Virus record (IMG/VR): IMGVR_UViG_3300030099_004448
Span: 124,001 to 188,000 of that record
DNA length: 64,000 nucleotides
Reading direction: 5' to 3' (one strand)
In this document: piece by piece, positions 27,352 to 41,686 of the stretch
Layout: the number at the start of each line of letters is the position of its first letter
How positions within the stretch are numbered: the first letter of the stretch is position 1
Position numbers and translations under genes: made by a program
Notes under the pieces: model-generated
Databases searched by the model: none
The model's input: the letters and a program-made list of their open reading frames with translations, nothing else
Told to the model about the DNA's origin: nothing

Positions 27352-28452
27352 ATGTCTGAAACTAGAAAAACTGCACTGGTTCTCGGTGCAGGTGGATTTA
27401 TTGGAAGTCACATGGTGAAGAGACTCAAGTCCGAAGGATATTGGGTCCGTGGTGTAGATCTTAAGTACCCAGAATTTTCTGCAACTGCTGCAGATGAATT
27501 TGTTCAGGGTGATCTGCGTGATGTAGAATTCGTTCGTCGGGTCATTCAGTTCAAGGGTGAGCAAGGAAATTTCTATAATTCAGTACCTTACCGTTACATC
27601 CGTCCTTTCGACGAGATCTATCAGTTCGCTGCTGATATGGGTGGTGCAGGTTTCGTTTTCACTGGAGAGAATGATGCAGACATCATGCACAACTCCGTAT
27701 CTATCAACCTGAATGTCCTTGAGGAAGTTCGTAAACTCAATGAGACTTTTGATGGAGAACCTGCTAATCATGAGTGTGTGCGTCCTGCACTAGATCAACC
27801 TACTAAGATCTTCTATTCTGGTTCTGCTTGCATGTATCCAGAACACAACCAACTTGACCCTAATAATCCCGATTGCCGTGAAGAATCCGCATATCCAGCA
27901 AACCCTGATTCGGAATATGGATGGGAGAAACTCTTTAGTGAGAGACTCTACTTCGCATATCATCGCAACCATGGTATCCCTGTTAGGGTTACTCGTTATC
28001 ATAACATTTTTGGACCCGAAGGGACCTGGGAGGGTGGAAGAGAGAAAGCTCCAGCTGCAATCTGCCGTAAAGTCGCCTATCTTCCTGAGGAAGGTGGAGC
28101 AATCGAGGTGTGGGGAGACGGCTTACAGACTCGTTCCTTCCTGTTCATTGATGAATGCATTGAAGCGTCTCGACGGTTGATGGACTCCGACTTCATTGGA
28201 CCTGTAAACATTGGTTCTGAAGAGATGGTAACCATCAATGAACTTGTAGAAACTGCTGCTCGAGTCTCTGGGAAGGAAGTAAGAAAGATTCACAAACTGG
28301 ATGCTCCTCTGGGTGTTCGTGGACGCAACTCTAACAACGATGTTGTCCGCAGAGAACTTGGGTGGGATTATTCGCAAACTCTTGAGGAAGGTATTCGTAA
28401 AACCTACAACTGGATCTCTGAACAAATTATTAACAACCAAAATGAAAATTGA
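27352..28452 (+). CDS. NAD-dependent epimerase, GDP-mannose 3,5-epimerase (GME)-like
   Basis: GAGGFIG, AADMGG, SACMYPE, YGWEK, GTWEGGREKAPAAICRK and WGDGLQTRSF, all characteristic of GME-type extended SDRs. Confidence 0.88.
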   Translation: MSETRKTALVLGAGGFIGSHMVKRLKSEGYWVRGVDLKYPEFSATAADEFVQGDLRDVEFVRRVIQFKGEQGNFYNSVPYRYIRPFDEIYQFAADMGGAGFVFTGENDADIMHNSVSINLNVLEEVRKLNETFDGEPANHECVRPALDQPTKIFYSGSACMYPEHNQLDPNNPDCREESAYPANPDSEYGWEKLFSERLYFAYHRNHGIPVRVTRYHNIFGPEGTWEGGREKAPAAICRKVAYLPEEGGAIEVWGDGLQTRSFLFIDECIEASRRLMDSDFIGPVNIGSEEMVTINELVETAARVSGKEVRKIHKLDAPLGVRGRNSNNDVVRRELGWDYSQTLEEGIRKTYNWISEQIINNQNEN

Positions 28453-29011
28453 CATCGTTCGTGACGAAGTAAAGTCATTAGATATTGATCATCTCAAAGC
28501 TCTGTCACTCAATCCTAATGATTGGCAGGCAGCAGGTGTCAGTGAGTATCGACTCTATGCATATCTGTCTACTTTCTTTAATAAGACTACCATTCTAGAC
28601 ATTGGTACTAGAACTGGTGGTTCTGCCCTTTCACTTTCATACAATCCACAGAACACTGTACGCAGTTATGATCTTGTGGAACAGGGTGCAAGTACTATCA
28701 AAAAAGATAATCTTTCATTCTTCATTGGTAATTTCATGGAGGATGAAGATATCGACTGGGATAATGTTTCTATTGTCATGATCGATGTTGATCCTCACGA
28801 TGGTGCTCAGGAACGAGTCATGATGGACTGGTTGCGAGATAAAGGTTGGAAGGGTATCATGCTTCATGATGATATCGGTCCTGGTTGGCCTGATATCCAA
28901 CTCATGTGGGATGAAATTCCCGAACCTAAAATTGATGTTACTGAGATCGCTCACATGAGTGGTACTGGTCTTGTCAATTTTGGTGAAGCACACGAAGTCT
29001 CTGTTGTATGA
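28442..29011 (+). CDS. Class I SAM-dependent methyltransferase-like protein
   Basis: ILDIGTRTGGSA motif I; IDVDPHDG; LHDD. Confidence 0.7.
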   Translation: MKIDIVRDEVKSLDIDHLKALSLNPNDWQAAGVSEYRLYAYLSTFFNKTTILDIGTRTGGSALSLSYNPQNTVRSYDLVEQGASTIKKDNLSFFIGNFMEDEDIDWDNVSIVMIDVDPHDGAQERVMMDWLRDKGWKGIMLHDDIGPGWPDIQLMWDEIPEPKIDVTEIAHMSGTGLVNFGEAHEVSVV

Positions 29012-29862
29012 TGAAAATTCTTGTTCTTGGTTCTAGTGGTCAGGTTGGTGCATACCTGGTTGAGTATCTTCGTGAGAAAGGTCACGAAGTAATTGAGTTT
29101 GATAAAAACAAAGATCCTCATTGGCAGGATCTTACGGTGAATAATAATGCATATCTTATGGAGTGCATGATCAAGGCAGACTTTGTGTTCTTCCTTGCAT
29201 TTGACGTTGGTGGATCTAGGTATCTGAAGAAGTATCAACACACTTATCGATTCCTCCATAACAATACAAAGATGATGGCAAACGTCTTTGAACAACTTGA
29301 AGCCAATAAGAAACCATTTGTCTTTGCATCATCTCAGATGAGCAATATGTCTTACTCACCTTATGGTGTTGCTAAGAAGATGGGAGAACTATACACCAAA
29401 GCCCTTGGTGGTAAGATCGTTCACTTCTGGAATGTCTATGGTATTGAAAAAGACATGGACAAGGCACACGTCATCACTGACTTCATTAAGAAGGGATTTG
29501 AAACGGGTGATATCTCTATGTTGACAGATGGAACTGAACAACGTGAGTTCCTCTATGCAGAAGATTGTTGTGAAGCCTTAGAGTCTGTCATGGAAAACTA
29601 TGATAAACTCGATTCGGAAGATAATCTACACATCACTTCTTTTGAAGCAACTAGTATTCTTGATATTGGTCGCATCATCCAAGGATTGTTTGCAGAGGTT
29701 GGTCGTAGTGTAACTGTTACACCTGCAGAATCTAAAGACGAGGTTCAGAAAGATAAGAGAAATGAGGCAGACAGGTTCATTACTAAGTATTGGAATCCCA
29801 AAACCACAATTCAAGATGGTATTCGTAACGTATTTAATGACATGAAAGGAGAGTTCCTATGA
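29008..29862 (+). CDS. NAD-dependent epimerase/dehydratase
   Basis: LVLGSSGQVG; YGVAK (YxxxK); NVYG; DGTEQREFLY. Confidence 0.9.
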   Translation: MMKILVLGSSGQVGAYLVEYLREKGHEVIEFDKNKDPHWQDLTVNNNAYLMECMIKADFVFFLAFDVGGSRYLKKYQHTYRFLHNNTKMMANVFEQLEANKKPFVFASSQMSNMSYSPYGVAKKMGELYTKALGGKIVHFWNVYGIEKDMDKAHVITDFIKKGFETGDISMLTDGTEQREFLYAEDCCEALESVMENYDKLDSEDNLHITSFEATSILDIGRIIQGLFAEVGRSVTVTPAESKDEVQKDKRNEADRFITKYWNPKTTIQDGIRNVFNDMKGEFL

Positions 29863-30071
29863 AACTACTTACACTTGAAGATTATCAGAAGGCAGGTGAG
29901 ACTTTTTGGCCAAAGTATTGGTATGTTGCCAAAGAACTTGGTGAAGATGCCAAGGCAGAGGACATTTTGAAGTGCATGGAAGCTGTTGGTACAGTTGCAC
30001 TGAGATTCAAGATGGAAGAGAAAGAAGGTCCGTTCGGTTTTAACAAAACAGAAAAAAATAATGAAGATTAA
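29859..30071 (+). CDS. Small hypothetical protein
   Basis: ORF coupled to both neighbours. Confidence 0.65.
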   Translation: MKLLTLEDYQKAGETFWPKYWYVAKELGEDAKAEDILKCMEAVGTVALRFKMEEKEGPFGFNKTEKNNED

Positions 30072-30852
30072 TTTGATTTGCAACGACTCATTGTTGCCCT
30101 CTACATCAGACAAAAACACTGCTAAGAATACTGAATGGGTCTATGATGGATCGGGTGCGGTGAGTTTGTATGTCAATCAGAAATCTTTAGATATATTGCA
30201 AGATGTCTCTAGCACGCCTAAGTATATTTGGCTATTAGAGTCAAAACAAATTATCCAGGGGATCTATGATTGGATTCTTACAAACTATGACTTTGTTGCT
30301 TCCAGAGTGGACGGTATTTTTAGTTGCGATAAAGAACTCTGCGAAAAATATCCGAAGTTCTTTTACGCACTGAGTAACGCTGCACCATGGATTGAAGAAC
30401 GTCAGATCTATGAGAAGACTAAACTAGTCTCCATGATTTCTTCAAACAAAGCAATGGTTCCTGGTCATCGCAAGAGACTGGAATTCGTCCAAAAATTTAG
30501 AGATCAAGTTGATCTTTATGGTAGGGGATTTAATGACCTTCCCCGTAAGGAAGAGGGTATTCGAGATTACATGTTCTCTGTGGCAGTAGAGAACGCCGTC
30601 TATGATACATACTTTACGGAGAAACTTACAGACTGTTTCGCCACAGGAACGATTCCTGTCTTCTACGGTTGTAGAGGAGTCACAGAATATTTCAACGAAG
30701 ATGGAATTATATTCCTAGATGATGACTTTGACATTTCCACACTGACTGAAGATCTTTATCATTCCAAATTGGATGCGGTTAAAGATAACTTTGAACGTGC
30801 CAACAACCTGCCAGTGGCAGAAGATTATCTATATGAAACTTATTGGAAATGA
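30061..30852 (+). CDS. Glycosyltransferase, GT10 (alpha-1,3-fucosyltransferase)-like
   Basis: YMFSVAVEN...YFTEKLTDCFATGTIPVFYG, the GT10 signature. Confidence 0.8.
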   Translation: MKINLICNDSLLPSTSDKNTAKNTEWVYDGSGAVSLYVNQKSLDILQDVSSTPKYIWLLESKQIIQGIYDWILTNYDFVASRVDGIFSCDKELCEKYPKFFYALSNAAPWIEERQIYEKTKLVSMISSNKAMVPGHRKRLEFVQKFRDQVDLYGRGFNDLPRKEEGIRDYMFSVAVENAVYDTYFTEKLTDCFATGTIPVFYGCRGVTEYFNEDGIIFLDDDFDISTLTEDLYHSKLDAVKDNFERANNLPVAEDYLYETYWK

Positions 30853-31514
30853 GTAGTCGATTTAGTTATTTTGGAGAGAATGACATCACACTCACTGGTG
30901 TCATTCACGTCGGTGCCCACAGGGGTGAAGAGGTCAATGAATATGAAGACCTTGGCGCTAAACAAGTCATTTGGGTTGAAGCGAACCCTGATGTATTTGA
31001 AGAGATGCGTGTTGCATTGACTAATGCTGAATCTACTATTGAATCTCATGCATTTCAATACGCTGCAAGTACAGAGGATCATGCTACTGTAAAGTTCAAC
31101 AGATATTATGGACCCGATGCTGGTTATCTTAGGGGTAACAAGGGATGTTCATCTCTTCTGAAAGCAGAGGGTAGATTTGAAGCCTGGTATAAAGATACAA
31201 TCGAAGTAGAAACCATTACTATTGATACTCTTTTAGAAGAGAATGACTTCAAAGTAGAAGACTTCCAACTCCTAAACATGGATGTTCAGGGTGCTGAGTT
31301 AATGGTTTTGAGGGGTTCTGAAAAAGTCCTAGATAATGTGAAGTGGGTTACCACTGAAGCAACCTGGGAAGATCCTGATTACATTGACAACGTAATGTAT
31401 GATGAGTTAAAATCTTTCTTGGAATCTAAAGGATTTGTTGAGACACAAATTATTCCCCATGCAGAGAACTGGGGTGATGTTCTTTTTGTAAAGGAGACCC
31501 ATGAACAGAGTTAA
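30849..31514 (+). CDS. FkbM-family methyltransferase
   Basis: HVGAHRGEE, VEANP, TIDTLL, LNMDVQGAELMVLRG. Confidence 0.88.
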   Translation: MSSRFSYFGENDITLTGVIHVGAHRGEEVNEYEDLGAKQVIWVEANPDVFEEMRVALTNAESTIESHAFQYAASTEDHATVKFNRYYGPDAGYLRGNKGCSSLLKAEGRFEAWYKDTIEVETITIDTLLEENDFKVEDFQLLNMDVQGAELMVLRGSEKVLDNVKWVTTEATWEDPDYIDNVMYDELKSFLESKGFVETQIIPHAENWGDVLFVKETHEQS

Positions 31515-32259
31515 GGATTTTCAAGAGTTAGAAACAAGAATCGTGACATGGATTAAAGATTATGTCACTAAGAACAAACTGAATAGTCTTGTAGTCGGGG
31601 TATCTGGAGGCATTGATTCTGCAGTAGTCTCGACTCTTTGTGCTAGAACTGGTCTGCCGACCTATGTTCTCTCGATGCCACTGAACTCAAGTTCTGCAAA
31701 CGATGACCTTTCGGATTCATACTCTAATTTCCTTGAGGACAATTATGAGAATGTAACTAAAATTCGAGTGGATCTAGGTAAAGTTTATCAGTCATTCATG
31801 GACAGTCTTGACTTCTGGTGTGGTGATGGTGAATATACGACGAGTGGTCTAGCAAATGCGAATACTAAATCTCGTATGCGTATGGTAACTTTGTATCAAG
31901 TTGCAGGAACCACTGGTGGAATTGTTGTGGGAACAGGAAATAAGGTTGAAGATTATGGAGTTGGGTTCTATACTAAGTACGGTGACGGTGGTGTAGACAT
32001 TGCACCTATCGCAGATCTATACAAGACTGAAGTATGGGAACTTGGTAAACACCTTGGTGTTGATCAACGTATCATTGATGCTCCTCCTACTGATGGTCTT
32101 TGGGATGACAGTCGAACTGATGAAGATCAGATTGGTGCATCCTATGAAGATCTAGAATATGCCATGGAACATGGAACTGGTCCTGCAGTCCGAATCCTCC
32201 ATGACTATCATACAAAAAACAAGCACAAAATGAATCCTATCCCGACTTTTGAACTATGA
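31501..32259 (+). CDS. nadE: NH3-dependent NAD+ synthetase
   Basis: GVSGGIDSAV (PP-loop), NTKSRMRM, GTGNKVE, TKYGDGGVD, PIADLYKTEV, PPTDGLW. Confidence 0.93.
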   Translation: MNRVKDFQELETRIVTWIKDYVTKNKLNSLVVGVSGGIDSAVVSTLCARTGLPTYVLSMPLNSSSANDDLSDSYSNFLEDNYENVTKIRVDLGKVYQSFMDSLDFWCGDGEYTTSGLANANTKSRMRMVTLYQVAGTTGGIVVGTGNKVEDYGVGFYTKYGDGGVDIAPIADLYKTEVWELGKHLGVDQRIIDAPPTDGLWDDSRTDEDQIGASYEDLEYAMEHGTGPAVRILHDYHTKNKHKMNPIPTFEL

Positions 32260-33401
32260 AAATTGGTCTTATTGGTGCAGGAAGACTCGGTATCTGTCTT
32301 GCTCTCTTGATCGAGAGGGCTGGGTATAATGTTTTGGTATCTGATATTCGTCCTGATTACGTTGACGCCTTAAATAGGAAGGAGATCGTAACGGAGGAAC
32401 CTGATGTCCAGTGGCTCCTTAAACAAACGGAAAGATTCGAGGCGACTTGGGAAAACCAACGTGTCATCGACGAGTGCGACTTTATTATTTGTCTTGTTGC
32501 AACTCCTTCTCTTAATGATGGTTCTTATGATATAAGTTCTGTTTGGAATGTTGTTGAAGACTTCAAAAAGTCTGAATCAAAACTAAACGGAAAAACTCTG
32601 GTGGTTGGATGTACAACTAACCCAGGAGATTGTGAGAAATTTAGTGAAGAGCTTTCATACTTTGGAGTGAATGTCGTTTACAATCCTGAATTTATTGCAC
32701 AGGGTACTATTGTTAGTGATTTGCAAAATGCAGATATGGTTCTCATCGGTGGTGCTGATGATGAGACCTATGAGTTCATGCAAGAAATTTATAGTCGCAT
32801 CCAAGCAAGTCCGCCTCGGTGGGGACGAATGTCTACAACTGCTGCAGAACTTGTAAAGATCGCAGTAAATTGTTTTCTGACTATGAAAATTAGTTATGCC
32901 AACATGGTTGGTGAAGTCATGATTCAAGCAGGTCTTGCGGATGAAATCGAGGGAGTCATGCAAGCCATCGGAGACGACTCTAGAATCGGAAATAAATATC
33001 TTAAGTTCGGGTATGGATTTGGTGGTCCATGTCTTCCAAGAGACAATCGTGCCTTTGCATCATTTGCATCTAAGGTTGGTGTCAAGTATAATCTTGGTGA
33101 GACTACTGATAACTTCAATGACGAACATGCGAAGTTCCTCTGTAATTACTATTTGAGCAAGAACAAAGATAGTAAACCCTTCTACTTCCGATATGTTTCA
33201 TATAAGGAAGGAACGGACATCCTTACGGAAAGTCAACAGTATCGCCTCTGCGAGGATCTTTTGTATCAAGGATACACTTGTTATGTTGACGACAACGAAA
33301 GTATTATCACCCAACTAAAACAAAATTCCAAATTAGATGTCACTAGACTTAAGTTTGGAAAACCACCAGAAGATGTACAAGTTATTGAGATTGACCTATG
33401 A
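32256..33401 (+). CDS. ugd: UDP-glucose/GDP-mannose 6-dehydrogenase family protein
   Basis: IGAGRLG, VATPS, YNPEFIAQG, AELVK...N, GFGGPCLPRD. Confidence 0.88.
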   Translation: MKIGLIGAGRLGICLALLIERAGYNVLVSDIRPDYVDALNRKEIVTEEPDVQWLLKQTERFEATWENQRVIDECDFIICLVATPSLNDGSYDISSVWNVVEDFKKSESKLNGKTLVVGCTTNPGDCEKFSEELSYFGVNVVYNPEFIAQGTIVSDLQNADMVLIGGADDETYEFMQEIYSRIQASPPRWGRMSTTAAELVKIAVNCFLTMKISYANMVGEVMIQAGLADEIEGVMQAIGDDSRIGNKYLKFGYGFGGPCLPRDNRAFASFASKVGVKYNLGETTDNFNDEHAKFLCNYYLSKNKDSKPFYFRYVSYKEGTDILTESQQYRLCEDLLYQGYTCYVDDNESIITQLKQNSKLDVTRLKFGKPPEDVQVIEIDL

Positions 33402-34258
33402 TCGGGTACAACAGACTCGGAAGTAACGGACGTTTGGGAAACCAAATGTTTCAATATGCATCATTAAGAGGCATTGCAGATAAAAATGGATATGATTGGT
33501 GTATTCCTCCTGAGGAATATGATCATAAGGATAACTATGGTTTGTTTGAAACTTTCAAACTAATTAGTGTTGCGCCAAAGAATATTGGATTTGTTCAGGG
33601 TGATTATGTGCAAGAAAATGATCATTGTTTTTTAGAAGACTTTTTCAATGTTCTTCCAGACAACGTTAGTTTAGATGGATACTTTCAAACAGAAAAATAC
33701 TTCTCGCACATTAGAGAAGAAATACTCGCGGATTACACATTCAGGGACGATTTCTTCCTTCCTTGTAAACAGTATGTTGATAGTCTGGATGTGCCTCCTA
33801 TCTTCCTGCATATTCGTCAGTCTGATAACATCGGAAGAGAAGAATACCACCCCATTCTTCCCCTTACATATTATGAAGAAGCTCTGAAAGAGTTTCCTGA
33901 AGATACCCCTTGTTTTGTTCTTACAGACGATATTGAGTGGTGTAAGAAACAACCGTTCTTTGATAATGATAGATTCATGTTCAATGAGAACAATGATCGG
34001 TATCAATACCAGACTATTGATGGTCTTGGACGTATGCAGAATACTCTTCTGCCCCAGGTTGATCTCTGTCTTATGAGTCTTTGTTCTGGTGCTATCATTG
34101 CAAACTCATCATTCTCTTGGTGGGGAGCATGGTTGCAGGATGATGCGGGTAAGGTTGTTGCACCTAATCCTAAGAAGTGGTTTGGTACTGCCATGACGCA
34201 TCTAGATACCTCAGACATCGTGCCTCATCGTTGGATTATTAAAGAGTGGAGTAAGTAA
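33398..34258 (+). CDS. GT11 alpha-1,2-fucosyltransferase-like #1
   Basis: GRLGNQMFQYA, GYFQTEKYF, HIR, IIANSSFSWWGAWL. Confidence 0.92.
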   Translation: MIGYNRLGSNGRLGNQMFQYASLRGIADKNGYDWCIPPEEYDHKDNYGLFETFKLISVAPKNIGFVQGDYVQENDHCFLEDFFNVLPDNVSLDGYFQTEKYFSHIREEILADYTFRDDFFLPCKQYVDSLDVPPIFLHIRQSDNIGREEYHPILPLTYYEEALKEFPEDTPCFVLTDDIEWCKKQPFFDNDRFMFNENNDRYQYQTIDGLGRMQNTLLPQVDLCLMSLCSGAIIANSSFSWWGAWLQDDAGKVVAPNPKKWFGTAMTHLDTSDIVPHRWIIKEWSK

Positions 34259-35154: not shown

Positions 35155-35966
35155 AAGATTTAACATTCCTATTACCATGTCGCATTGAGTCTGAAGATCG
35201 ACTCAAAAATGTAATTACATCTACGACATATCTCCTCAAGAACTTTCCAGAAGCAAAAGTAATTCTGAAAGAAGTTGATACCAGGTCACACTTCAAGTTT
35301 CGTGCCCTACCTATCATCAAAAAGTATGTAAATACGGATCAACTCACTCACATCTTTGAGGAGAGTAATGAGAAGTTCTTTCATAAGACTCGTATCTTGA
35401 ATGATCTTTTGGTTGCTTCTGATACTTCTATCGTTTATAATCATGACGTGGATGTAGTTCTTCCCAAAGAAAGTTATGAACTCGCATACGCTGCAATTAA
35501 AAAGGGTCAATCTGATGCAGTATATCCTTTTGGTTGCGGAGTCTATCAATGGGCTGTAAACTATTCCGAATCAATTTTCAGTCAGTTCTTGGATTCTGAT
35601 TTTGATTTCAGTACACTTGATGAAGGTAAATTTAGAGTTGCTTCATCTATTGGTTGGGGTCAAATGATCAAAAGAGATACTGAGATTGAAGTTGGTATGT
35701 GGAATGAAAACTTCATCTCATGGGGTGCGGAGGATTGTGAGTTCTACTTCCGTCTGAATAGTTTTGGTCGAAAGGTGGGTAGAGTTCTTGGTGACATCTA
35801 TCACTTTGAACACGGTAGAACATTCAACTCGCACTACCATAATCCCAAGTTCATGGATAACCACAATCTATGGCAAGATATTAGAACGTGGGATGCCGAT
35901 AAACTTATTGAGTATTATCAAAAACAAGATTACAACGCAAAGAGGTTAGAAGAACTGTCATGCTAG
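35151..35966 (+). CDS. GT-A fold glycosyltransferase (GT2/GT7C-like)
   Basis: FHKTRILN, HDVD (DxD), WNENFISWGAEDCEF, YHFEH. Confidence 0.85.
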   Translation: MKDLTFLLPCRIESEDRLKNVITSTTYLLKNFPEAKVILKEVDTRSHFKFRALPIIKKYVNTDQLTHIFEESNEKFFHKTRILNDLLVASDTSIVYNHDVDVVLPKESYELAYAAIKKGQSDAVYPFGCGVYQWAVNYSESIFSQFLDSDFDFSTLDEGKFRVASSIGWGQMIKRDTEIEVGMWNENFISWGAEDCEFYFRLNSFGRKVGRVLGDIYHFEHGRTFNSHYHNPKFMDNHNLWQDIRTWDADKLIEYYQKQDYNAKRLEELSC

Positions 35967-36814
35967 CAATTAATGAGCTCGGGAACATGGGTCGTCTAGG
36001 AAACCAGATGTTCCAATATGCAGCAACGCGAGGACTTGCAGCTGCAAAGGGGTATGAATGGTGTATTCCACCTTTTACGACTCCCAGGATTGATAACTAC
36101 AGTCTTGCTAATTGTTTTACCATGGAGAGTGTTACTCCTAGTAATCAATACATCCTTGATCGTGGACATGCTCCAGTAGTTATGGAAAAACAGTTCCACT
36201 TCGATGAGGAACTGATGCAATTGTGTCCCAATGATGTTTCTTTGTATGGATTTTTCCAGACTGAGAAGTATTTTGCACACATTCGAGATGAAATTCGTAG
36301 GGACTTTACTTTCCATGAAGATCTGACGGTTCCCATCCAAGGATTCCTTAACGATCTGAAAGATCCTATCTTCTTGCATGTACGTCGTGGTGATCCCAAC
36401 CTTGTCGATGCTCGTGGATTTAAGTGGTCTTACACTCAGTGTTCTTCTATGCACCCGCCACAAGGCGTTGAGTACTACGAAGAGGCGTTGAAACAATTCC
36501 CAGACGATCAAGAGGTTGTCGTCGTCTCAGACTCGCCTGAGTGGGTTATGGAACAGGAACTATTCAAACCTGATCGTTTCTTTGTTTCTACACCCGAAGA
36601 GAAGTATCCTGATGGATCTTATACTCCTTATATTGACCTCTGTTTGATGGCGAATTGTAAGGGTGCTATCATTGCAAACTCTACTCTTTCTTGGTGGGGT
36701 GCATGGTTGCAGAATGGTGCTGGTAAAGTCATTGCACCTAAGAACTGGTTCGGTCCAGATTACGCTGATAAAGATACTAAAGATTTGTACTGTGAGGGTT
36801 GGGAAGTTATTTGA
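35960..36814 (+). CDS. GT11 alpha-1,2-fucosyltransferase-like #3
   Basis: GRLGNQMFQYA, GFFQTEKYF, HVRRGD, ANSTLSWWGAWL. Confidence 0.92.
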   Translation: MLAINELGNMGRLGNQMFQYAATRGLAAAKGYEWCIPPFTTPRIDNYSLANCFTMESVTPSNQYILDRGHAPVVMEKQFHFDEELMQLCPNDVSLYGFFQTEKYFAHIRDEIRRDFTFHEDLTVPIQGFLNDLKDPIFLHVRRGDPNLVDARGFKWSYTQCSSMHPPQGVEYYEEALKQFPDDQEVVVVSDSPEWVMEQELFKPDRFFVSTPEEKYPDGSYTPYIDLCLMANCKGAIIANSTLSWWGAWLQNGAGKVIAPKNWFGPDYADKDTKDLYCEGWEVI

Positions 36815-37605
36815 TGGATAAGAATAAGTCTGTATCTAAACTGAAAGGTATGGGACCCATCTATTACATCAACTTAGATGGGCAACCAGAACGCAAACAG
36901 TACATGGAAGACATGTTTGCACATTGGGAAATTGAAAACTACGAACGTATTTCTGCATATGATGGTAGAGAGGATGATCTAAGCGACATCCTCCACGGTC
37001 GTTATCCAGAAAATATGAGTTCTGGTGAGATTGGGTGTGTAACCTCTCACCTTAAACTCCTTAAACATTTTCTAGAGACATCTGATGCACCATACTGTGT
37101 GGTGATGGAAGATGATGTTGATATTAATGTTGCTAAGTATTGGACTTTCACTTGGAATCAACTTTATGCAAGATTCCCCTATGATTATGATGTTGTTCAG
37201 TTGGCAGTCATCTGCCCTGGTACACTTCACGTCAATCTACACAGGAGATTTGTAAACGATTTCTCCACGGCGTGTTATGTCATTACACGTCACCATGCGG
37301 AAAAGGTGGTTCGCCTCCATTGTCGGGGGGAAAAGTATAAACTAGACTATAAAATCAAGCCACGTGCTGTTGCAGACGATTTGATCTATAACTCTGGTAA
37401 TACGTTCGCCTTGCCTATATTTCTCTATAAGATTGAGTTGGGGTCCTCAATTCATCCTGAACATATTGAGATTTTCCATCGAGGATCACATGACGGTTTA
37501 CGAGAACTCTGGGAAAGACAAGGATCGACACTAGAAATTGATAGATTGATGGAGTGGGATCCGTATTTGGGACGAACGTCAGAAGGTCCTCAAAAAAATA
37601 CTTGA
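36814..37605 (+). CDS. GT25-family glycosyltransferase
   Basis: YYINLD...ERKQYM, GEIGCVTSH, VVMEDDV, STACYVIT. Confidence 0.85.
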   Translation: MDKNKSVSKLKGMGPIYYINLDGQPERKQYMEDMFAHWEIENYERISAYDGREDDLSDILHGRYPENMSSGEIGCVTSHLKLLKHFLETSDAPYCVVMEDDVDINVAKYWTFTWNQLYARFPYDYDVVQLAVICPGTLHVNLHRRFVNDFSTACYVITRHHAEKVVRLHCRGEKYKLDYKIKPRAVADDLIYNSGNTFALPIFLYKIELGSSIHPEHIEIFHRGSHDGLRELWERQGSTLEIDRLMEWDPYLGRTSEGPQKNT

Positions 37606-37653: not shown

Positions 37654-37884
37654 ATGACTCGCTCAGGAACAATCACAACTGAAGACGGCGGAAGAACAAA
37701 TATGTTCGCTACCGAACCTCGTATGTATGTCGATCAAACTGCAGCAGAACGCTATGGTTATGAAACCTATGCGGAACGTGCAGAAAAACTGAATGGTCGC
37801 ACCGCGATGCTCGGTTTTATTGCCGCAGTAGTTTCTTATGCTACTACTGGTAGTTTGTTCTTCTTTGGTGCATTTGGTATCTGA
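37654..37884 (+). CDS. hli: High-light-inducible protein (long form)
   Basis: AEKLNGRTAMLGF chlorophyll-binding motif plus TM. Confidence 0.93.
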   Translation: MTRSGTITTEDGGRTNMFATEPRMYVDQTAAERYGYETYAERAEKLNGRTAMLGFIAAVVSYATTGSLFFFGAFGI

Positions 37885-38105
37885 TGGAAAACTCCCTTCT
37901 TGAAATTCTTACTTATTATGTAATTGGTGGTGCCCTTTTGATTGGTGCCCCAGGAGTATTCTTCTTTGTAGTCTTCATGTCTGCCCTCCAAAATACGAAG
38001 GGTCGCATGGTGGGTTACAAAGACCATAAAACATATGGTGATTCTTCTGTCTACGAAAACACACAAAGTGACAACACTAACTTTTATCTTGTACTAGATA
38101 GTTGA
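37884..38105 (+). CDS. Small membrane protein
   Basis: N-terminal TM; coupled to hli. Confidence 0.6.
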   Translation: MENSLLEILTYYVIGGALLIGAPGVFFFVVFMSALQNTKGRMVGYKDHKTYGDSSVYENTQSDNTNFYLVLDS

Positions 38106-38119
38106 AAAGATTTGATACC

Positions 38120-38269
38120 ATGACCAACGAGAACGCACTGTGGGAAGACATGCGAAGACTCAATGCCCTATACGAAGAACTCTGCTGGGGGCACGATGAT
38201 GAACTTATTTTTACTCACGAAAACGGTAGAGTCGTAATCTTTAACCAATCCTTGGAGAAAAAACAATGA
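38120..38269 (+). CDS. Small hypothetical protein (49 aa)
   Basis: Manual translation MTNENALWEDMRRLNALYEELCWGHDDEL...; stop overlaps the next hli ATG. Confidence 0.55.
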   Translation: MTNENALWEDMRRLNALYEELCWGHDDELIFTHENGRVVIFNQSLEKKQ

Positions 38270-38373
38270 CTGAAAGAGCAGAACGTATTAACGGTTGGGC
38301 CGCAATGATCGGTGTAATCGCAGCAATTGGATCCTATGCAGCAACAGGTCAAATCATTCCAGGTATCTGGTGA
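38266..38373 (+). CDS. hli: High-light-inducible protein (35-aa short form)
   Basis: MTERAERINGWAAMIGVIAAIGSYAATGQIIPGIW: AERxNGWxAMIG and TGQIIPG motifs. Confidence 0.92.
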   Translation: MTERAERINGWAAMIGVIAAIGSYAATGQIIPGIW

Positions 38374-38572: not shown

Positions 38573-38576
38573 ATAC

Positions 38577-38601
38577 GAGGAGGGAAACCTCCTCATTTTT
38601 T
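38577..38601 (+). terminator. Intrinsic terminator
   Basis: GAGGAGG-GAAA-CCTCCTC followed by a T-tract. Confidence 0.75.
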
Positions 38602-38612
38602 ATGGGATTATT

Positions 38613-41003
38613 ATGTTAACCAACACAATTACGGATGGAGTAAAGGAACGTCTTCTGTACACACTAGGAAAGCGTCCCGAATCTGCCTCTGCACACGATG
38701 TCTACATGGCACTTTGTTATGCCGTTAGAGATCGAATGATTGATAATCATTTAGTTGAAAAGCCATATAAGAAGGAAGTTGCATATTTGTCTGCAGAGTT
38801 CCTTATTGGACCGCAGTTGAGTAACAACTTACTCAATTTGGATATTCGCAAAGAAGCTGCTGCAGCAGTTGGTCAGTTTGGATATGATTTGGATGAGATT
38901 TTAGAATTGTCTGAAGAACCTGGACTTGGAAATGGTGGTCTAGGTAGACTTGCTGCATGTTACATGGAATCCATGGCAACTCTAAAAGTTCCTGCCACTG
39001 GATATGGTATTAGATATAAGTACGGTATTTTCAAACAAACAATCCGTGACAATCAACAGGTAGAAGTCACCGATAATTGGTTGCATGGAGATTGGCCATG
39101 GGAAGTTTGTTATCCAGATGAATCTGTCATGATCGGATTCGGGGGAAAGGTAGAACACTATGAGTTTGATGATAATGACCATAGAGTTCGTTGGGCACCT
39201 CAACAACATGTGGTTGCAGTTCCTTATGATGTTTTGCAAGCAGGATATAAAGTAGATAGTTGTGCAAAGATTAGACTCTGGAGAGCAGACGCTATTGATG
39301 TGTTTGACTTCAAAGCATTCAACCAGGGAGACTATCTGGGATCCGTAGAGAACAGTGTAACCACGGAGACTATCTCAAAAGTTCTTTATCCAAATGATGG
39401 AACCACTCAAGGAAAAGAACTGAGATTAAAACAGCAGTTCTTCTTTGTGAGTGCTTCTCTTCAGGACATGATCAGAAGTCTCAAAGAACGTGATCTACCT
39501 CTCGAAGAGTTCTACAACTATTATCAAGTTCAGTTAAATGATACTCATCCATCAGTTGCGGTTGCAGAACTAATGAGACTTCTTATGGATGATCACCACA
39601 TGGAGTGGGATCTTGCATGGGATATTACAAGTAAGTCGATTGCATATACCAATCACACACTACTTCCAGAGGCACTGGAGAAGTGGAGTGTAAGTCTGTT
39701 TGAAAAACTCCTACCCAGACACTTGGAGATCATTTATGAAATCAATTCCAGATTCCTCCAGATCGTCAGAATGCACTACCCAGGAGACGAAGAAATCCTC
39801 AGAAAACTGTCCATCATTGATGAGACGGGTGGTAGATTTGTCCGCATGGCCAATCTTGCAACAGTCGGATCTCACCATATCAATGGTGTTGCTTCACTTC
39901 ACTCAGATCTGATCACTAAGAACCTCATGCCTGAGTTCTATGACCTTTGGCCTCACAAGTTCACCAATGTAACCAATGGTGTGACTCCTCGTCGCTGGTT
40001 GGCAGACTCTAACCCTGCACTTGCTGAGGTTCTTACAAATTGCGTTGGTGATGAATGGGTTACTGATATGACTCGTCTCAGTGATCTAGAGAAGTTTGCT
40101 GATGATCCTATTGTTCTTGAAAAGATTGGTGCGACAAAACTCATTGGTAAACATAAACTGGCACAATATATACAGAAGACACTTGGCATCTCAGTTGATC
40201 CGTCAAGTATGTTTGATGTACAAGTAAAGAGGATTCATGAATACAAACGACAGCATCTCCTTGCTCTATGGATTGTGTCTCGGTATTTGTATATCAAAAA
40301 TCATAAAGACGATTATGTTGTTCCACGTACAGTAATCTTTGGTGGTAAAGCCGCACCTGGTTACTATATGGCGAAAGAGATTATTCGTTTCATTTGTAAT
40401 CTTGCGGAGACTGTCAACTCAGATCCTGATATGGATGGAAAGTTGCGTGTGGTATTCCTACCTAACTATAGTGTGAAGTTGGGTGAGAAAGTCTATCCCG
40501 CTGCGGATCTCTCTGAACAGATCTCAACCGCAGGTAAGGAAGCATCTGGTACTGGTAATATGAAGTTCCAGATGAATGGTGCTCTGACTATTGGTACACT
40601 CGATGGTGCAAATGTAGAGATTCGTGACTTGGTAGGTGAAGAGAACTTCTTCCTCTTTGGTAATACTGAAGAAGAGATCGGTGATCTATGGAAGAATGGT
40701 TATGATCCTAAAGAACACATGAGTTCTGGATTGTTTGAGTCGATTGAATTAATCAAGTCTGGTCACTTCTCGAATGGTGATAAGAATGCATTTGTTTCTA
40801 TCATTGATAATCTGCTGCAGAGTGATCCATTCTGTGTCTGTGCAGACTTTGCAGATTATTGCCGTGCCCAGAACGTTGTAGATAACACCTGGGGTAATAG
40901 AGAGGAATGGAATCGTAGATCTCTGATGAACATTGCTAGATCTGGATTCTTCTCATCCGATAGATCTATTCAAGATTACTGTGACAACATCTGGAAAATA
41001 TGA
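38613..41003 (+). CDS. glgP: Glycogen/starch/alpha-glucan phosphorylase (GT35)
   Basis: YLSAEFLIG, GLGNGGLGRLAAC, QLNDTHP, YTNHTLLPEALE, VKRIHEYKRQHL, GGKAAPGY and the PLP-lysine motif EASGTGNMKF; 796 aa, uninterrupted. Confidence 0.97.
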   Translation: MLTNTITDGVKERLLYTLGKRPESASAHDVYMALCYAVRDRMIDNHLVEKPYKKEVAYLSAEFLIGPQLSNNLLNLDIRKEAAAAVGQFGYDLDEILELSEEPGLGNGGLGRLAACYMESMATLKVPATGYGIRYKYGIFKQTIRDNQQVEVTDNWLHGDWPWEVCYPDESVMIGFGGKVEHYEFDDNDHRVRWAPQQHVVAVPYDVLQAGYKVDSCAKIRLWRADAIDVFDFKAFNQGDYLGSVENSVTTETISKVLYPNDGTTQGKELRLKQQFFFVSASLQDMIRSLKERDLPLEEFYNYYQVQLNDTHPSVAVAELMRLLMDDHHMEWDLAWDITSKSIAYTNHTLLPEALEKWSVSLFEKLLPRHLEIIYEINSRFLQIVRMHYPGDEEILRKLSIIDETGGRFVRMANLATVGSHHINGVASLHSDLITKNLMPEFYDLWPHKFTNVTNGVTPRRWLADSNPALAEVLTNCVGDEWVTDMTRLSDLEKFADDPIVLEKIGATKLIGKHKLAQYIQKTLGISVDPSSMFDVQVKRIHEYKRQHLLALWIVSRYLYIKNHKDDYVVPRTVIFGGKAAPGYYMAKEIIRFICNLAETVNSDPDMDGKLRVVFLPNYSVKLGEKVYPAADLSEQISTAGKEASGTGNMKFQMNGALTIGTLDGANVEIRDLVGEENFFLFGNTEEEIGDLWKNGYDPKEHMSSGLFESIELIKSGHFSNGDKNAFVSIIDNLLQSDPFCVCADFADYCRAQNVVDNTWGNREEWNRRSLMNIARSGFFSSDRSIQDYCDNIWKI

Positions 41004-41686
41004 ACATTTGGGTTGGGTATGACACCCGTGAACACTGGGCATTCAAGGTCTGTGATTACAGCATCCGCAAATACAGACCTGATGCAATCGTAAAACCGAT
41101 TGAACAACGAAACACAAGACTTCTTGGTCTCTACGATAGACCTATAGATGAGAATGCCTCTACTGAGTTTTCTCTAACTAGATTTCTAACGCCTGCACTA
41201 TCAAACTTTAAGGGATGGTCACTTTACTGTGATTGTGACTTTCTCTTTTTGAATGATGTTAAAAAGTTATTTGATCTTGCTGATCCTAAGTACGCTGCAA
41301 TGGTGGTCAAACATGACTATAAACCAAAGAGTAATACAAAGATGGATGGTCAAATTCAGTTTCCATATCCTAGAAAGAACTGGAGTTCTTTGATCTTATT
41401 CAATAACGAACATCCATCCCATAAGTTTTTGGATGTCAATGGTATGACTCCTGCAGAGCTGCACCAGTTTGACTGGATTGCAGACAAAGATCTGGGTGAA
41501 TTGCCTAAACGGTGGAATTGGTTGGTTGGTTATTGCACCGATGAAGACCTATGGTCTGATATTCCAGCTGCATTACATTACACAGATGGTGGACCATGGT
41601 TTGAAGAGACTAAAGACTGTGATTACTCTGGTTTGTGGAATCAATATTATGAGGAGTGTCTAGATGCAAATAAAATATATCGTTGA
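41000..41686 (+). CDS. GT8-like glycosyltransferase resembling plant CDI
   Basis: VGYDTRE, STEFSLTRFL, DCDF (DxD), VVKHDY, KMDGQ, YPRKNWSS, HYTDGGPWF. Confidence 0.85.
   Translation: MNIWVGYDTREHWAFKVCDYSIRKYRPDAIVKPIEQRNTRLLGLYDRPIDENASTEFSLTRFLTPALSNFKGWSLYCDCDFLFLNDVKKLFDLADPKYAAMVVKHDYKPKSNTKMDGQIQFPYPRKNWSSLILFNNEHPSHKFLDVNGMTPAELHQFDWIADKDLGELPKRWNWLVGYCTDEDLWSDIPAALHYTDGGPWFEETKDCDYSGLWNQYYEECLDANKIYR

What the first reader, a model, noticed from the sequence alone, without database searches (positions are those of the whole stretch)
27352..41686. Possible phage GDP-L-galactose glycan pathway: GME-like epimerase, four fucosyltransferase-fold GTs and a CDI-like GT8
Seen: the 27352 epimerase has GME-specific motifs (AADMGG, SACxYPE, GTWxGGREKAPAA), and no recognisable gmd/fcl pair for GDP-fucose lies in this window. 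There are three GT11 and one GT10, plus a GT8 with the STEFSxTRFL/YPRKNWSS motifs of plant CDI. Established: GME makes GDP-L-galactose; L-fucose is 6-deoxy-L-galactose; plant CDI was reported to transfer L-Gal from GDP-L-Gal. Inference: the 'fucosyltransferases' may be L-galactosyltransferases building an unusual glycan on virion proteins or on the host surface (receptor masking), tailored by the two methyltransferases.
Basis: inference. Interest (0 to 1): 0.7.

Follow-up and report, generated by a model that had tools for sequence, protein, structure and literature searches.

The report
Cyanophage GDP-L-galactose glycan gene cassette
A marine Synechococcus-type phage carries a riboswitch-like RNA, a genuine GDP-mannose 3,5-epimerase, and a run of sugar transferases whose relatives use GDP-L-fucose or GDP-L-galactose, so it probably builds an L-galactose-containing glycan; clusters of this kind are already published, only with generic names.

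Summary
Window 27352-28452 encodes a true GDP-mannose 3,5-epimerase (GME) homologue: PDB 2c59 at E 1.7e-79, with all four catalytic residues kept. One GT10 and three GT11 genes pass Pfam cut-offs. The 228-aa 'GT8' is 48% identical to Arabidopsis CDI, the GDP-L-Gal transferase of rhamnogalacturonan-II (TM 0.93).

The whole 238.9-kb phage genome, a T4-like cyanomyovirus near S-SCSM2R and S-SSM7, has no gmd and no true fcl.

- a wcaG RNA motif plus an intrinsic terminator directly upstream of GME;
- a second SDR, a NadE-like gene, a sugar 6-dehydrogenase, a GT2 and a GT25;
- the fact that the CDI-like gene lies in a separate unit behind a glycogen phosphorylase.

In related phages the same downstream genes sit behind GMD+Fcl instead of GME:
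- S-SRM01 has GT10-FkbM-GT11-GT2-GT11-GT25 behind GMD+Fcl.
- P-SSM2 has the second SDR directly after GMD-Fcl.
- Close GT10 orthologues lie 0.7-2.4 kb from a GME in 63 of 65 viral contigs.

This fits GDP-L-Gal standing in for GDP-L-Fuc. Donor specificity, a host supply of GDP-Fuc and the acceptor remain untested.

The cluster type, and a cyanophage GME annotation, are already published.

The parts
27180..27280 (+). wcaG RNA motif (Rfam RF01761), a candidate riboswitch aptamer at the head of the cassette
   Evidence: 72.5 bits against a gathering score of 42. The same motif heads the cassette in L018, L020, L027 (S-SM2) and L060. It is annotated in S-SCSM2R and S-SCSM1.
27290..27320 (+). Intrinsic-terminator-like hairpin (10-bp stem, 4-nt loop, T7 run) between the wcaG motif and the GME start; the likely expression platform
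   Evidence: A hairpin plus U-run with a different stem sequence follows the motif in 6 of 7 loci checked.
27352..28452 (+). GDP-mannose 3,5-epimerase (GME) homologue, 366 aa, with two surface insertions
   Evidence: PDB 2c59 at E 1.7e-79. C160, Y189, K193 and K232 are invariant. 60-66% identical to homologues in many bacterial phyla. At least 600 viral stretches.
28442..29011 (+). Small protein, possibly a methyltransferase (weak); start set at ATG 28442, overlapping the GME stop
   Evidence: FtsJ at E 0.001, 19.5 bits, below cut-off. Start candidates. Orthologue of S-SCSM2R ORF237, annotated 'hypothetical'.
29008..29862 (+). SDR2: short extended-SDR, a virus-typical family with Fcl-like or UXS-like structural neighbours; the most frequent partner of GME
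   Evidence: PF01370 at 95 bits. Fcl model only 60 bits against 500. GxxGxxG and YGVAK are seen in the alignment. Atlas neighbours. Found in 37 of 80 GME loci. The 61% orthologue follows GMD-Fcl in P-SSM2.
30061..30852 (+). GT10 (alpha-1,3/4-fucosyltransferase fold) glycosyltransferase
   Evidence: PF00852 at 47.5 bits. Motifs FSVAVEN and YFTEK. A GME lies 0.7-2.4 kb upstream in 63 of 65 loci with an orthologue of at least 60% identity.
30843..31514 (+). FkbM-family methyltransferase (probable sugar O-methylation)
   Evidence: PF05050 at 71 bits; TIGR01444 at 69.8 bits.
31501..32259 (+). NadE-like ATP-dependent amidotransferase (annotated NAD synthase)
   Evidence: PF02540 at 166 bits; TIGR00552 at 180 bits. 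Always paired with the dehydrogenase and often directly after GME, in phages (L044, L078, L086, P-TIM68) and in bacteria (L095).
32256..33401 (+). NDP-sugar 6-dehydrogenase (UDP-glucose / GDP-mannose dehydrogenase family), 381 aa, nucleotide specificity unresolved
   Evidence: TIGR03026 at 217 bits. PDB hits tie between GDP-mannose 6-dehydrogenase 1mfz (3.2e-32) and UDP-Glc dehydrogenases.
33398..34258 (+). GT11a (alpha-1,2-fucosyltransferase family); motif I reads HIRQSD
   Evidence: PF01531 at 63.3 bits; alignment A4.
34258..35154 (+). GT11b; motif I reads HVRRGN, followed by a 12-residue insertion
   Evidence: PF01531 at 58.9 bits.
35106..35966 (+). GT2-type glycosyltransferase (true start perhaps ATG 35151)
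   Evidence: PF13632 at 27.9 bits; phrog_15655 at 398 bits.
35960..36814 (+). GT11c; motif I reads HVRRGD, followed by a 12-residue insertion
   Evidence: PF01531 at 80.8 bits. The insertion type lies in loci with SDR2 in 95 of 97 cases, and directly after SDR2 in 6.
36799..37605 (+). GT25-family glycosyltransferase (true start probably ATG 36814)
   Evidence: PF01755 at 59 bits; phrog_2835 at 415 bits.
37654..38373 (+). Two high-light-inducible protein genes (37654-37884 and 38266-38373) and small ORFs; not part of the glycan machinery, they separate the two units
   Evidence: Translations. Terminator-like hairpin at 38577-38594.
38613..41003 (+). Glycogen/starch phosphorylase; 4-bp overlap with the CDI-like gene
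   Evidence: PF00343 at 1039 bits. Same pairing in S-SCSM2R.
41000..41686 (+). CDI-like glycosyltransferase (distant GT8 fold); homologue of the plant RG-II L-galactosyltransferase
   Evidence: 48% identity to Q9XIP8, TM 0.93.
41664..46162 (+). Six tandem paralogous genes of unknown function (223-284 aa, GC 31-35%), co-oriented with and overlapping the CDI-like gene's end; their link to the glycan pathway is unknown
   Evidence: No Pfam, PHROG, NCBIfam or Atlas hit. Paralogy. Weak ParB/Srx-like fold hints only.
57146..57463 (+). Cupin-type mannose-6-phosphate isomerase, which would feed the GDP-mannose pool
   Evidence: PF01050 at 74.2 bits, at G000:C1:181146-181463.

Best explanation
The region is the variable glycan-building cassette of a T4-like marine cyanomyovirus.

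Transcription enters through a wcaG RNA element with its own terminator. This is inferred to be a ligand-controlled attenuator; the ligand is unknown.

The first enzyme is a real GDP-mannose 3,5-epimerase. It takes the host's GDP-mannose and makes GDP-L-galactose (with GDP-L-gulose). This is inferred from 50-66% identical characterised or near-characterised relatives and from intact catalytic residues. [quoted passage not shown]

The product may be retouched by the adjacent SDR2, by the dehydrogenase/NadE pair and by the methyltransferase(s). It is then used by soluble cytoplasmic transferases whose families take GDP-beta-L-fucose or GDP-beta-L-galactose: one GT10, three GT11 and, in the neighbouring unit, a CDI-type enzyme. 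A GT2 and a GT25 add other sugars.

The phage has no gmd or fcl. In related phages the same downstream genes sit behind GMD+Fcl instead of GME. GDP-L-Gal is therefore most likely the phage's stand-in for GDP-L-Fuc.

The acceptor is unknown. It could be a host lipid-linked or LPS-type glycan, or phage virion proteins. No flippase, polymerase, ligase or priming transferase is encoded.
For: GME identity.

No gmd or fcl in the complete genome.

GT10 and GT11 families and motifs.

CDI homology. CDI biochemistry as cited in PMC12168206.

Interchangeable heads:
- S-SRM01 has GMD-Fcl ... GT10-FkbM-GT11-GT2-GT11-GT25, with 48-68% identity to the window's module (FkbM only 28%), and no GME.
- P-SSM2 has GMD-Fcl-SDR2, the SDR2 at 61% identity.
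- S-SCSM1 has GMD-Fcl-GME in a row.

Linkage:
- GME lies 0.7-2.4 kb upstream of GT10 in 63 of 65 close orthologue loci and in 7 of 15 distant ones. None has GMD or Fcl within 10 kb.
- Several different architectures keep GME beside a GT10 or GT11: GME-GT10, GME-FkbM-GT10, GME-GT11, GME-SDR2-GT11.
- True GMD is found in only 2 of 45 GME-bearing viral records.
- Every GT10-bearing cyanophage isolate has either GME or GMD+Fcl.

Host and phage supply of GDP-mannose: MPI in the phage, no NTP_transferase in the phage, and host ManC stated in PMC9602691.

Regulation.

All 20 proteins are soluble.

The sequence recurs in 14 marine metagenome runs from at least 5 studies.
Against: - No assay or structure here reads donor choice. 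GT10 and GT11 relatives are known as fucosyltransferases.
- Hosts can carry gmd in genomic islands. Phage B23 has a GT11 with no donor genes nearby.
- A close relative's contig (L034/G020) has a GMD about 10 kb upstream of a nearly identical cluster.
- CDI-like genes in 80 other viral loci are never next to a true GME, and 9 are next to GMD-like genes.
- 0 of 35 GME-bearing bacterial genomes hold a CDI-like gene.
- Many linked loci are close relatives, so the counts are not independent events.
- The GME equilibrium favours GDP-mannose (own knowledge).
- The GME carries two insertions that are absent from characterised enzymes.
Confidence: 0.55

Rival explanations
1. The GT10 and GT11 enzymes are ordinary fucosyltransferases that run on host-made GDP-L-fucose. 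The GME serves only one transferase, for example the CDI-like enzyme or an unidentified one, or simply diversifies the sugar pool.
For: - The family annotations are fucosyltransferases.
- GMD is common in picocyanobacterial islands.
- B23 has a GT11 without any phage donor gene.
- S-SCSM1 keeps GMD, Fcl and GME together, as if they were not redundant.
- The L034 relative has a GMD on the same contig.
Against: - There is tight and repeated GME-GT10 and GME-GT11 adjacency in different architectures, without GMD or Fcl.
- GME and GMD+Fcl occupy complementary positions at the head of homologous modules.
- GMD is accessory in hosts, so it is not a dependable supply.
Confidence: 0.27
2. The donor that matters is not GDP-L-galactose itself but a derivative: GDP-L-gulose, a further epimer made by SDR2, or a GDP-hexuronic acid or uronamide made by the 6-dehydrogenase and the NadE-like amidotransferase.
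For: - SDR2 is the commonest direct neighbour of GME.
- GME-(NadE)-dehydrogenase adjacency recurs in phages and in unrelated bacteria.
- The dehydrogenase scores as well against GDP-mannose 6-dehydrogenase as against UDP-Glc dehydrogenases.
- GT11 proteins with an insertion next to the donor motif lie almost only in loci with SDR2.
Against: - No family model assigns these activities.
- NadE passes the NAD synthase domain model.
- Many cassettes have GME plus a GT10 or GT11 without SDR2 or the dehydrogenase.
Confidence: 0.12
3. The epimerase-like protein does not act on GDP-mannose, so the cassette has nothing to do with L-galactose.
For: - Public annotations call it UDP-glucose 4-epimerase or NAD-dependent dehydratase.
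- It has two insertions relative to plant GME.
Against: - There is a 58-order E-value gap between GME and any other SDR in PDB.
- The Cys/Lys epimerisation pair specific to GME is invariant.
Confidence: 0.05
4. The transferases decorate phage DNA to evade restriction rather than building a glycan on protein or lipid. This was suggested for S-SCSM2R.
For: The suggestion in PMC12801897. T4-type phages glucosylate their DNA (own knowledge).
Against: - There are eight transferases of LPS or oligosaccharide-type families, plus sugar methyltransferases and nucleotide-sugar tailoring enzymes.
- None resembles the T4 alpha- or beta-glucosyltransferases in the family scans.
Confidence: 0.02

Closest known systems
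GDP-mannose 3,5-epimerase (plant GME, PDB 2c59; bacterial GM35E of Methylacidiphilum, Gevaert 2019 as cited in PMC9602691)
   Same: Full-length homology (E 1.7e-79). NAD-binding glycine motif. Ser/Cys, Tyr-x3-Lys and Lys catalytic set. 60-66% identity to bacterial family members.
   Different: Two insertions (about residues 65-85 and 128-150). Encoded by a virus. Preceded by a wcaG RNA and a terminator. Activity not assayed.
Cell-wall synthesis and modification gene cluster of Synechococcus phage S-SCSM2R (PMC12801897) and the S-SSM7 / S-SSM6a cluster
   Same: Same gene order. 81% nucleotide identity over 71% of 27352-37605. Same phosphorylase / CDI-like pair. wcaG RNA annotated upstream.
   Different: - The published annotation is generic: 'nucleoside-diphosphate-sugar epimerase', 'GT24'.
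- S-SCSM2R has a 2OG oxygenase between the RNA and the GME.
- It has KdsB/KdsA after two hypothetical genes where the window has six paralogous unknown genes.
- It has many more genes between the two units.
S-SCSM1 ORF121-135 (PMC9602691): GMD, GDP-L-fucose synthase, GME, fucosyltransferases
   Same: A cyanophage GME already named as such (62.5% identity). wcaG RNA at the head. GT11 and methyltransferases downstream.
   Different: S-SCSM1 also makes GDP-fucose (GMD 569 bits, Fcl 455 bits). It has NodZ and POFUT-type enzymes. It lacks GT10, SDR2 and the CDI-like gene.
S-SRM01 and P-SSM2 GDP-fucose-headed cassettes
   Same: S-SRM01 has GT10-FkbM-GT11-GT2-GT11-GT25 in the same order (identities 48, 28, 49, 58, 47 and 68%). 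P-SSM2 has the SDR2 orthologue at 61%.
   Different: The head is GMD+Fcl, not GME. Their GT11 proteins have the canonical HxRRxDY motif without the 12-residue insertion seen in window GT11b and GT11c.
Arabidopsis CDI (At1g64980, Q9XIP8), the RG-II side-chain-A L-galactosyltransferase
   Same: 48% identity over the whole catalytic domain. TM 0.93. Shared motifs STEFSxTRFL and YPRKNWSS.
   Different: No plant N-terminal extension. Viral and bacterial family of more than 6,400 members. Other viral members sit near GMD-like genes, not GME genes, so the donor may be GDP-L-Fuc or another GDP-sugar in some.
Chlorovirus PBCV-1 virus-encoded capsid glycosylation (GMD/GMER plus cytoplasmic transferases and sugar methyltransferases); own knowledge, not tested here
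   Same: A virus supplies both the GDP-sugar enzymes and soluble transferases and methyltransferases, with no export machinery.
   Different: Eukaryotic algal virus. Fucose and rhamnose route, not GME. No sequence comparison was made here.

Membership tests
GDP-mannose 3,5-epimerase (GME/GM35E) | Full-length similarity to solved GMEs, clearly above other extended SDRs | tested here: met
   2c59 at E 1.7e-79, 8sg0 at 6.3e-77; the next family is at 2e-21.
GDP-mannose 3,5-epimerase (GME/GM35E) | Catalytic set: Cys145 and Lys217 as the acid/base pair, and Tyr174-x3-Lys178 (Arabidopsis numbering; roles from own knowledge of Major et al. 2005) | tested here: met
   C160, Y189, K193 and K232 align and are invariant in 10 sequences.
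GDP-mannose 3,5-epimerase (GME/GM35E) | [quoted passage not shown] | not testable with these tools
   Needs an enzyme assay.
GDP-L-fucose pathway (Gmd + Fcl) | [quoted passage not shown] | tested here: not met
   TIGR01472 gives no match in the genome. NF047922 gives 81 bits at best against a 500-bit cut-off. Positive control: S-SCSM1 GMD at 569 bits and Fcl at 455 bits.
GT10 fucosyltransferase family | Pfam PF00852 above cut-off, and the FxxAxEN...YxTEK nucleotide-sugar motif | tested here: met
   47.5 bits against 23.9. FSVAVEN and YFTEK present.
GT10 fucosyltransferase family | Uses GDP-L-fucose as donor | not testable with these tools
   Context only: GME-linked in 63 of 65 loci; GMD/Fcl-linked in S-SRM01.
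GT11 alpha-1,2-fucosyltransferase family | Pfam PF01531 above cut-off, and N-terminal GNQMFQ | tested here: met
   63.3, 58.9 and 80.8 bits. GNQMFQ is present in all three.
GT11 alpha-1,2-fucosyltransferase family | Motif I, HxRRGDY (GDP-fucose binding; own knowledge) | tested here: inconclusive
   GT11c has HVRRGD, GT11b has HVRRGN and GT11a has HIRQSD. GT11b and GT11c carry a 12-residue insertion in place of the Tyr.
CDI-type glycosyltransferase (plant RG-II L-galactosyltransferase) | Close sequence and fold match to Q9XIP8, well separated from other GT8-like proteins | tested here: met
   48% identity, TM 0.93, E 4e-31. The next hit has TM 0.64 and 18% identity. Plant CDI clusters are top in AFDB clusters.
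CDI-type glycosyltransferase (plant RG-II L-galactosyltransferase) | Transfers L-Gal from GDP-L-Gal | not testable with these tools
   Activity is reported for the plant enzyme only.
wcaG RNA (RF01761) | Covariance-model score above the gathering threshold, in the 5' leader of a sugar gene | tested here: met
   72.5 bits against 42; it ends 72 nt before the GME start.
Complete O-antigen / capsule-type locus | Priming phosphoglycosyl transferase, flippase or ABC exporter, polymerase or ligase (membrane proteins) | tested here: not met
   No hydrophobic segment typical of a membrane span in any of the 20 proteins of 27352-46162. No such Pfam family.

The most novel reading that the evidence does not exclude
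A virus-encoded GDP-L-galactose pathway:
- Fucosyltransferase-fold enzymes (GT10, GT11) and a CDI-type enzyme act as L-galactosyltransferases.
- GME and GMD+Fcl are interchangeable 'heads' of one modular cyanophage glycan cassette.
- The orphan wcaG riboswitch candidate, with its terminator, senses a GDP-sugar of this pathway.
- The plant RG-II enzyme CDI belongs to a mostly marine viral and bacterial family.
Probability: 0.3. Interest if true: 0.7.

Novelty: new member of a known kind. Interest (0 to 1): 0.5.

Why it matters
These cassettes are among the most variable and most abundant auxiliary gene sets of marine cyanophages. GME-like genes alone gave at least 600 viral stretches. What they build, and on what, is unknown.

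Assigning the head enzyme to GDP-L-galactose, and seeing that it replaces GMD+Fcl in front of homologous transferases, gives a concrete hypothesis that can be tested in a cultured system (S-SCSM2R or S-SSM7 on Synechococcus). It bears on phage-driven surface or virion glycosylation.

It also gives candidate ligands (GDP-sugars) for the orphan wcaG riboswitch candidate. And it offers cheap microbial sources of L-galactosyltransferases related to the plant cell-wall enzyme CDI.

Tried and rejected
- Host capacity for GDP-fucose could not be tested. Only literature was used.
- CDI-like gene in GME-bearing bacteria: 0 of 35 genomes. No positive control rang, so this is weak.
- CDI-like viral loci: no true GME within 10 kb in 80 loci. 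CDI-GME linkage is therefore not general.
- Metatranscriptome contigs cover the wcaG-GME 5' part almost identically and the rest with diverged pieces. The same contig ends occur in a DNA run, so neither transcription nor termination at 27313 can be claimed.
- phmmer of GT11c against PDB: no hit.
- NCBIfam and PHROGs add nothing for GT10, GT11 or CDI beyond family names.
- S-SM2 gene 191, upstream of its GME, was suspected to be a GMD. It is dTDP-glucose 4,6-dehydratase-like (257 bits) and scores only 43 bits on gmd.
- The six unknown paralogues gave no Atlas feature hit above 0.46, and only weak ParB/Srx-like fold resemblance (TM about 0.3-0.36, Foldseek E above 0.1). This was not accepted as an assignment.
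- The sigma-70-type promoter scan is at chance level (64 found against 58 expected) and was not used, apart from noting sites.
- The first viral-contig scan failed and was repeated.


Full report
WHAT THE WINDOW IS. The window is bases 124001-188000 of a 238,937-bp virus record that CheckV rates 100% complete. Megablast of 27352-37605 finds only cyanophages. The best is Synechococcus phage S-SCSM2R, at 80.8% identity over 71% of the query. S-SSM7, S-SSM6a and Sf-FS3 follow. The same DNA is held, at 73-97% of sampled words, by 14 marine metagenome runs from at least five studies. It is therefore a real and recurrent T4-like cyanomyovirus population.

CHECK OF THE OBSERVATION: THE EPIMERASE.
- The 366-aa product of 27352-28452 matches Arabidopsis GDP-mannose 3',5'-epimerase (2c59) at E 1.7e-79. 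The next non-GME SDR in PDB is at 2e-21.
- Counting along the alignment, C160, Y189, K193 and K232 correspond to At C145, Y174, K178 and K217.
- All four are invariant in an alignment with four other cyanophage proteins and five bacterial ones.
- Two insertions (about 65-85 and 128-150) are variable among phage copies and are absent from the plant enzyme.

CHECK OF THE OBSERVATION: THE OTHER GENES.
- GT10 at 30061 and GT11 at 33398, 34258 and 35960 pass Pfam cut-offs. The three GT11 genes are the only ones in the genome.
- GT10 keeps FSVAVEN and YFTEK.
- All three GT11 proteins keep GNQMFQ. Their motif I reads HIRQSD, HVRRGN and HVRRGD. The last two are followed by a 12-residue insertion.
- The FkbM methyltransferase is solid. 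The second 'methyltransferase' (best start 28442) is only a sub-threshold FtsJ hit.
- gmd is absent from the whole genome. The Fcl model touches only the two SDRs, far below its cut-off.

THE CDI CLAIM.
- The 228-aa protein of 41000-41686 carries STEFSLTRFL and YPRKNWSS.
- It has only a faint GT8 Pfam hit.
- It belongs to a family of more than 6,400 mostly marine metagenomic proteins.
- An AF2 model (pLDDT 86.9) finds Swiss-Prot Q9XIP8, 'Protein CDI' of Arabidopsis, as by far the best match: 48% identity over 232 residues, TM 0.93, rmsd 1.9 A. The next hit has TM 0.64 and 18% identity. Plant CDI entries also lead in the AFDB clusters.
- A 2025 review reports that recombinant Cdi transfers L-Gal from GDP-L-Gal to RG-II side chain A (PMC12168206).

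- A wcaG RNA motif (RF01761, 72.5 bits) lies at 27180-27280.
- Ten bases later comes a 10-bp GC-rich hairpin with a T7 run, at 27290-27320. GME starts at 27352.
- In six of seven loci examined, the motif is followed by such a hairpin plus U-run with a different stem sequence, whatever the first gene is. The motif heads the cassette in four of seven further viral loci. This is the layout of a transcription-attenuating riboswitch. Weinberg et al. listed wcaG as a riboswitch candidate with unknown ligand (PMC2864571).
- Between GME and GT10 lies SDR2 (29008-29862), a short extended SDR of a virus-typical family with Fcl-like and UXS-like structural neighbours.
- After the FkbM gene come a NadE-like amidotransferase and a 381-aa NDP-sugar 6-dehydrogenase. 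The dehydrogenase scores equally against GDP-mannose 6-dehydrogenase and UDP-glucose dehydrogenases.
- A GT2 and a GT25 complete the unit.
- Two hli genes and a terminator-like hairpin at 38577-38594 then intervene.
- The CDI-like gene belongs to a second unit. It overlaps the end of a glycogen phosphorylase gene by 4 bp and is followed by six tandem paralogous genes of unknown function.
- None of the 20 proteins has a membrane-span-like segment. The phage brings no export or priming machinery.
- Elsewhere in the window (57146-57463) is a cupin-type mannose-6-phosphate isomerase. There is no sugar-1-phosphate nucleotidyltransferase.

COMPARATIVE EVIDENCE: HOW COMMON THE GME IS.
- GME homologues are very common in viral contigs: at least 600 stretches.
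- They occur in about 25 distinct cultured or single-cell cyanophages. Nearly all are annotated as 'UDP-glucose 4-epimerase' or 'nucleotide-sugar epimerase'.
- Cellular homologues of 58-68% identity occur in many bacterial phyla. None of the best 80 is cyanobacterial.

COMPARATIVE EVIDENCE: WHAT SITS NEXT TO THE GME.
- I mapped the neighbours of the 80 best viral loci. The GME heads highly variable cassettes.
- Its commonest partners are SDR2 (37 of 80), GT10 (28 of 80) and GT11-type genes (about 40 of 80).
- Several distinct architectures occur: GME-GT10, GME-FkbM-GT10, GME-GT11, GME-SDR2-GT11 and GME-NadE-dehydrogenase-GT11.
- A true GMD was found in only 2 of 45 of these records. One of them is a contig with a cluster nearly identical to the window's.

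COMPARATIVE EVIDENCE: STARTING FROM GT10.
- 63 of 65 loci with an orthologue of at least 60% identity have a GME 0.7-2.4 kb upstream. The other two lack upstream sequence.
- 7 of 15 distant GT10 loci also have a GME.
- None has GMD or Fcl within 10 kb.
- Among isolates, every GT10-bearing cyanophage has a GME, except S-SRM01.

THE TWO MOST TELLING COMPARISONS.
- S-SRM01 has no GME. It has GMD and Fcl at the head of a cassette whose tail is GT10-FkbM-GT11-GT2-GT11-GT25. This is the same order as the window, at 48, 28, 49, 58, 47 and 68% identity.
- P-SSM2 has GMD-Fcl followed directly by an SDR2 orthologue of 61% identity.
- So homologous downstream enzymes follow either the GDP-L-fucose pair or the GME.
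- L-fucose is 6-deoxy-L-galactose. The simplest reading is that the GME product plays the part of GDP-L-fucose.
- S-SCSM1 has GMD, Fcl and GME in a row, and its authors already named the GME (PMC9602691).

LIMITS OF THIS EVIDENCE.
- Many of the linked loci are close relatives, so the counts are not independent.
- Phage B23 has a GT11 but no GME, GMD or Fcl within 12 kb. Host-supplied donors are evidently used by some phages.
- GMD is a known accessory gene of Prochlorococcus genomic islands (PMC5804319).
- CDI-like genes in 80 other viral loci are never beside a true GME. In nine cases they are beside a GMD-like gene.
- None of 35 GME-bearing bacterial genomes holds a CDI-like gene.
- The family may therefore take GDP-L-Fuc-type donors in general, not only GDP-L-Gal.
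- SDR2, the dehydrogenase and NadE may change the sugar before transfer. GME-(NadE)-dehydrogenase adjacency recurs in unrelated bacteria. GT11 proteins with the insertion beside motif I lie in loci with SDR2 in 95 of 97 cases.
- RNA-library contigs cover the region but do not prove transcription.

MECHANISM PROPOSED. Shown:
- the identity of the families;
- the absence of gmd and fcl;
- the RNA-plus-terminator leader;
- the modular replacement of heads;
- the lack of membrane proteins.

Inferred:
- Host GDP-mannose is converted by the GME to GDP-L-galactose or GDP-L-gulose. Host ManC is stated in PMC9602691. The phage MPI and glycogen phosphorylase push carbon towards it.
- The product is possibly tailored further.
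- The GT10, GT11 and CDI-type enzymes then transfer it, together with GT2 and GT25 sugars and O-methylation, onto an acceptor in the cytoplasm.
- Whether the acceptor is a host lipid-linked or LPS intermediate or a virion protein cannot be told.

COMPARISON WITH WHAT IS KNOWN, AND NOVELTY.
- The cluster type is published: S-SSM7 and P-SSM2 annotations, S-SCSM1 in 2022 and S-SCSM2R in 2025.
[quoted passage not shown] It names the GME homologue generically and calls the CDI-like gene 'GT24'. A term search of the paper found no mention of fucose or galactose.
- The window is thus a new member of a known kind.
- What is new is the reading: GME as the only GDP-sugar enzyme, a CDI orthologue, interchangeable heads, and a terminator-coupled wcaG element.

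VERDICT. Interest is moderate (0.5). The hypothesis is specific and testable in cultured relatives, but it rests on inference about donor specificity.

Noticed in passing
window 27180-27320; also L018:9830-10000, L020:8303-8470, L027:8785-8948, L004:6815-6954, L006:8893-9043: The wcaG RNA motif is followed within about 10-20 nt by a strong hairpin plus U-run whose stem sequence differs between phages. This is an aptamer-plus-terminator layout. The first gene behind it varies: GME, a dTDP-glucose-dehydratase-like gene, a 2OG oxygenase, or a hypothetical gene.
   Followed up: partly
window 41664-46162: Six tandem paralogous genes (223-284 aa, 20-25% identity, GC 31-35%, shared motifs FTKLPYLY, GxGRxL and GIGGxE) lie directly after the CDI-like gene. 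No Pfam, PHROG, NCBIfam or Atlas match. The AF2 model (pLDDT 79.7) has only weak ParB/sulfiredoxin-like resemblance. S-SCSM2R has two hypothetical genes and then KdsB/KdsA at this place.
   Followed up: partly
window 31501-33401; L095, L090, L118, L131, L135, L136, L168 (bacteria); L044, L078, L086, L008 (phages): The NadE-like gene and the NDP-sugar 6-dehydrogenase travel together. The pair, or the dehydrogenase alone, often sits directly beside a GME in both phages and unrelated bacteria. This hints that the 'NAD synthase' may amidate a sugar uronate rather than make NAD.
   Followed up: partly
window 34258-35154 and 35960-36814; many loci: A GT11 subtype has a 12-residue insertion (PNLxDxRGFKWxY) right after the HxRRGD donor motif. 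It is found in loci with SDR2 in 95 of 97 cases, and directly after SDR2 in six minimal GME-SDR2-GT11 cassettes. The GT11 proteins of GMD/Fcl-headed phages that were checked (S-SRM01, S-SCSM1, P-SSM2, ACG-2014f) and of B23 lack it.
   Followed up: partly
window 57146-57463: A cupin-type mannose-6-phosphate isomerase (PF01050, 74 bits). The phage has no mannose-1-phosphate guanylyltransferase.
   Followed up: partly
window 46221-46314: A PhotoRC-II RNA motif (73.3 bits) lies just after the six unknown genes, upstream of the next gene block.
   Followed up: no
window 25047-26327: A radical SAM / SPASM-domain protein lies upstream of the cassette. A tRNA at 26527-26599 and two small ORFs at 26654-27100 lie between it and the wcaG motif. 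Weakly similar radical SAM genes lie next to CDI-like genes in three other viral loci (L292, L297, L308).
   Followed up: no
window 18720-19955, 22732-22805, 26527-26599, 52215-52287: Eight tRNA genes lie in the window, five of them clustered at 18.7-20.0 kb. tRNA clusters also precede the GME cassette in related loci.
   Followed up: no
L091 (PCAW01000016.1, labelled 'Methanobacteriota archaeon' MAG): An 80%-identical GME followed by a cyanophage-type GT11 sits on a 25-kb contig of an archaeal MAG. It is most likely a mis-binned cyanophage contig.
   Followed up: no
L034 / G020 contig (IMGVR_UViG_3300042879_002807), C1:600-1550: A contig whose GME-to-GT25 cluster is 64-90% identical in protein to the window's also carries a near-cut-off GMD (373 bits) about 10 kb upstream, and a POFUT-like gene. 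Very close relatives therefore differ in having a fucose route.
   Followed up: partly
L259, L275, L279, L284, L291, L295, L305, L306: In other marine viral contigs, the CDI-like transferase (48-51% identity) lies within a few kb of a GMD-like gene that is 46-49% identical to the S-SCSM1 GMD.
   Followed up: no
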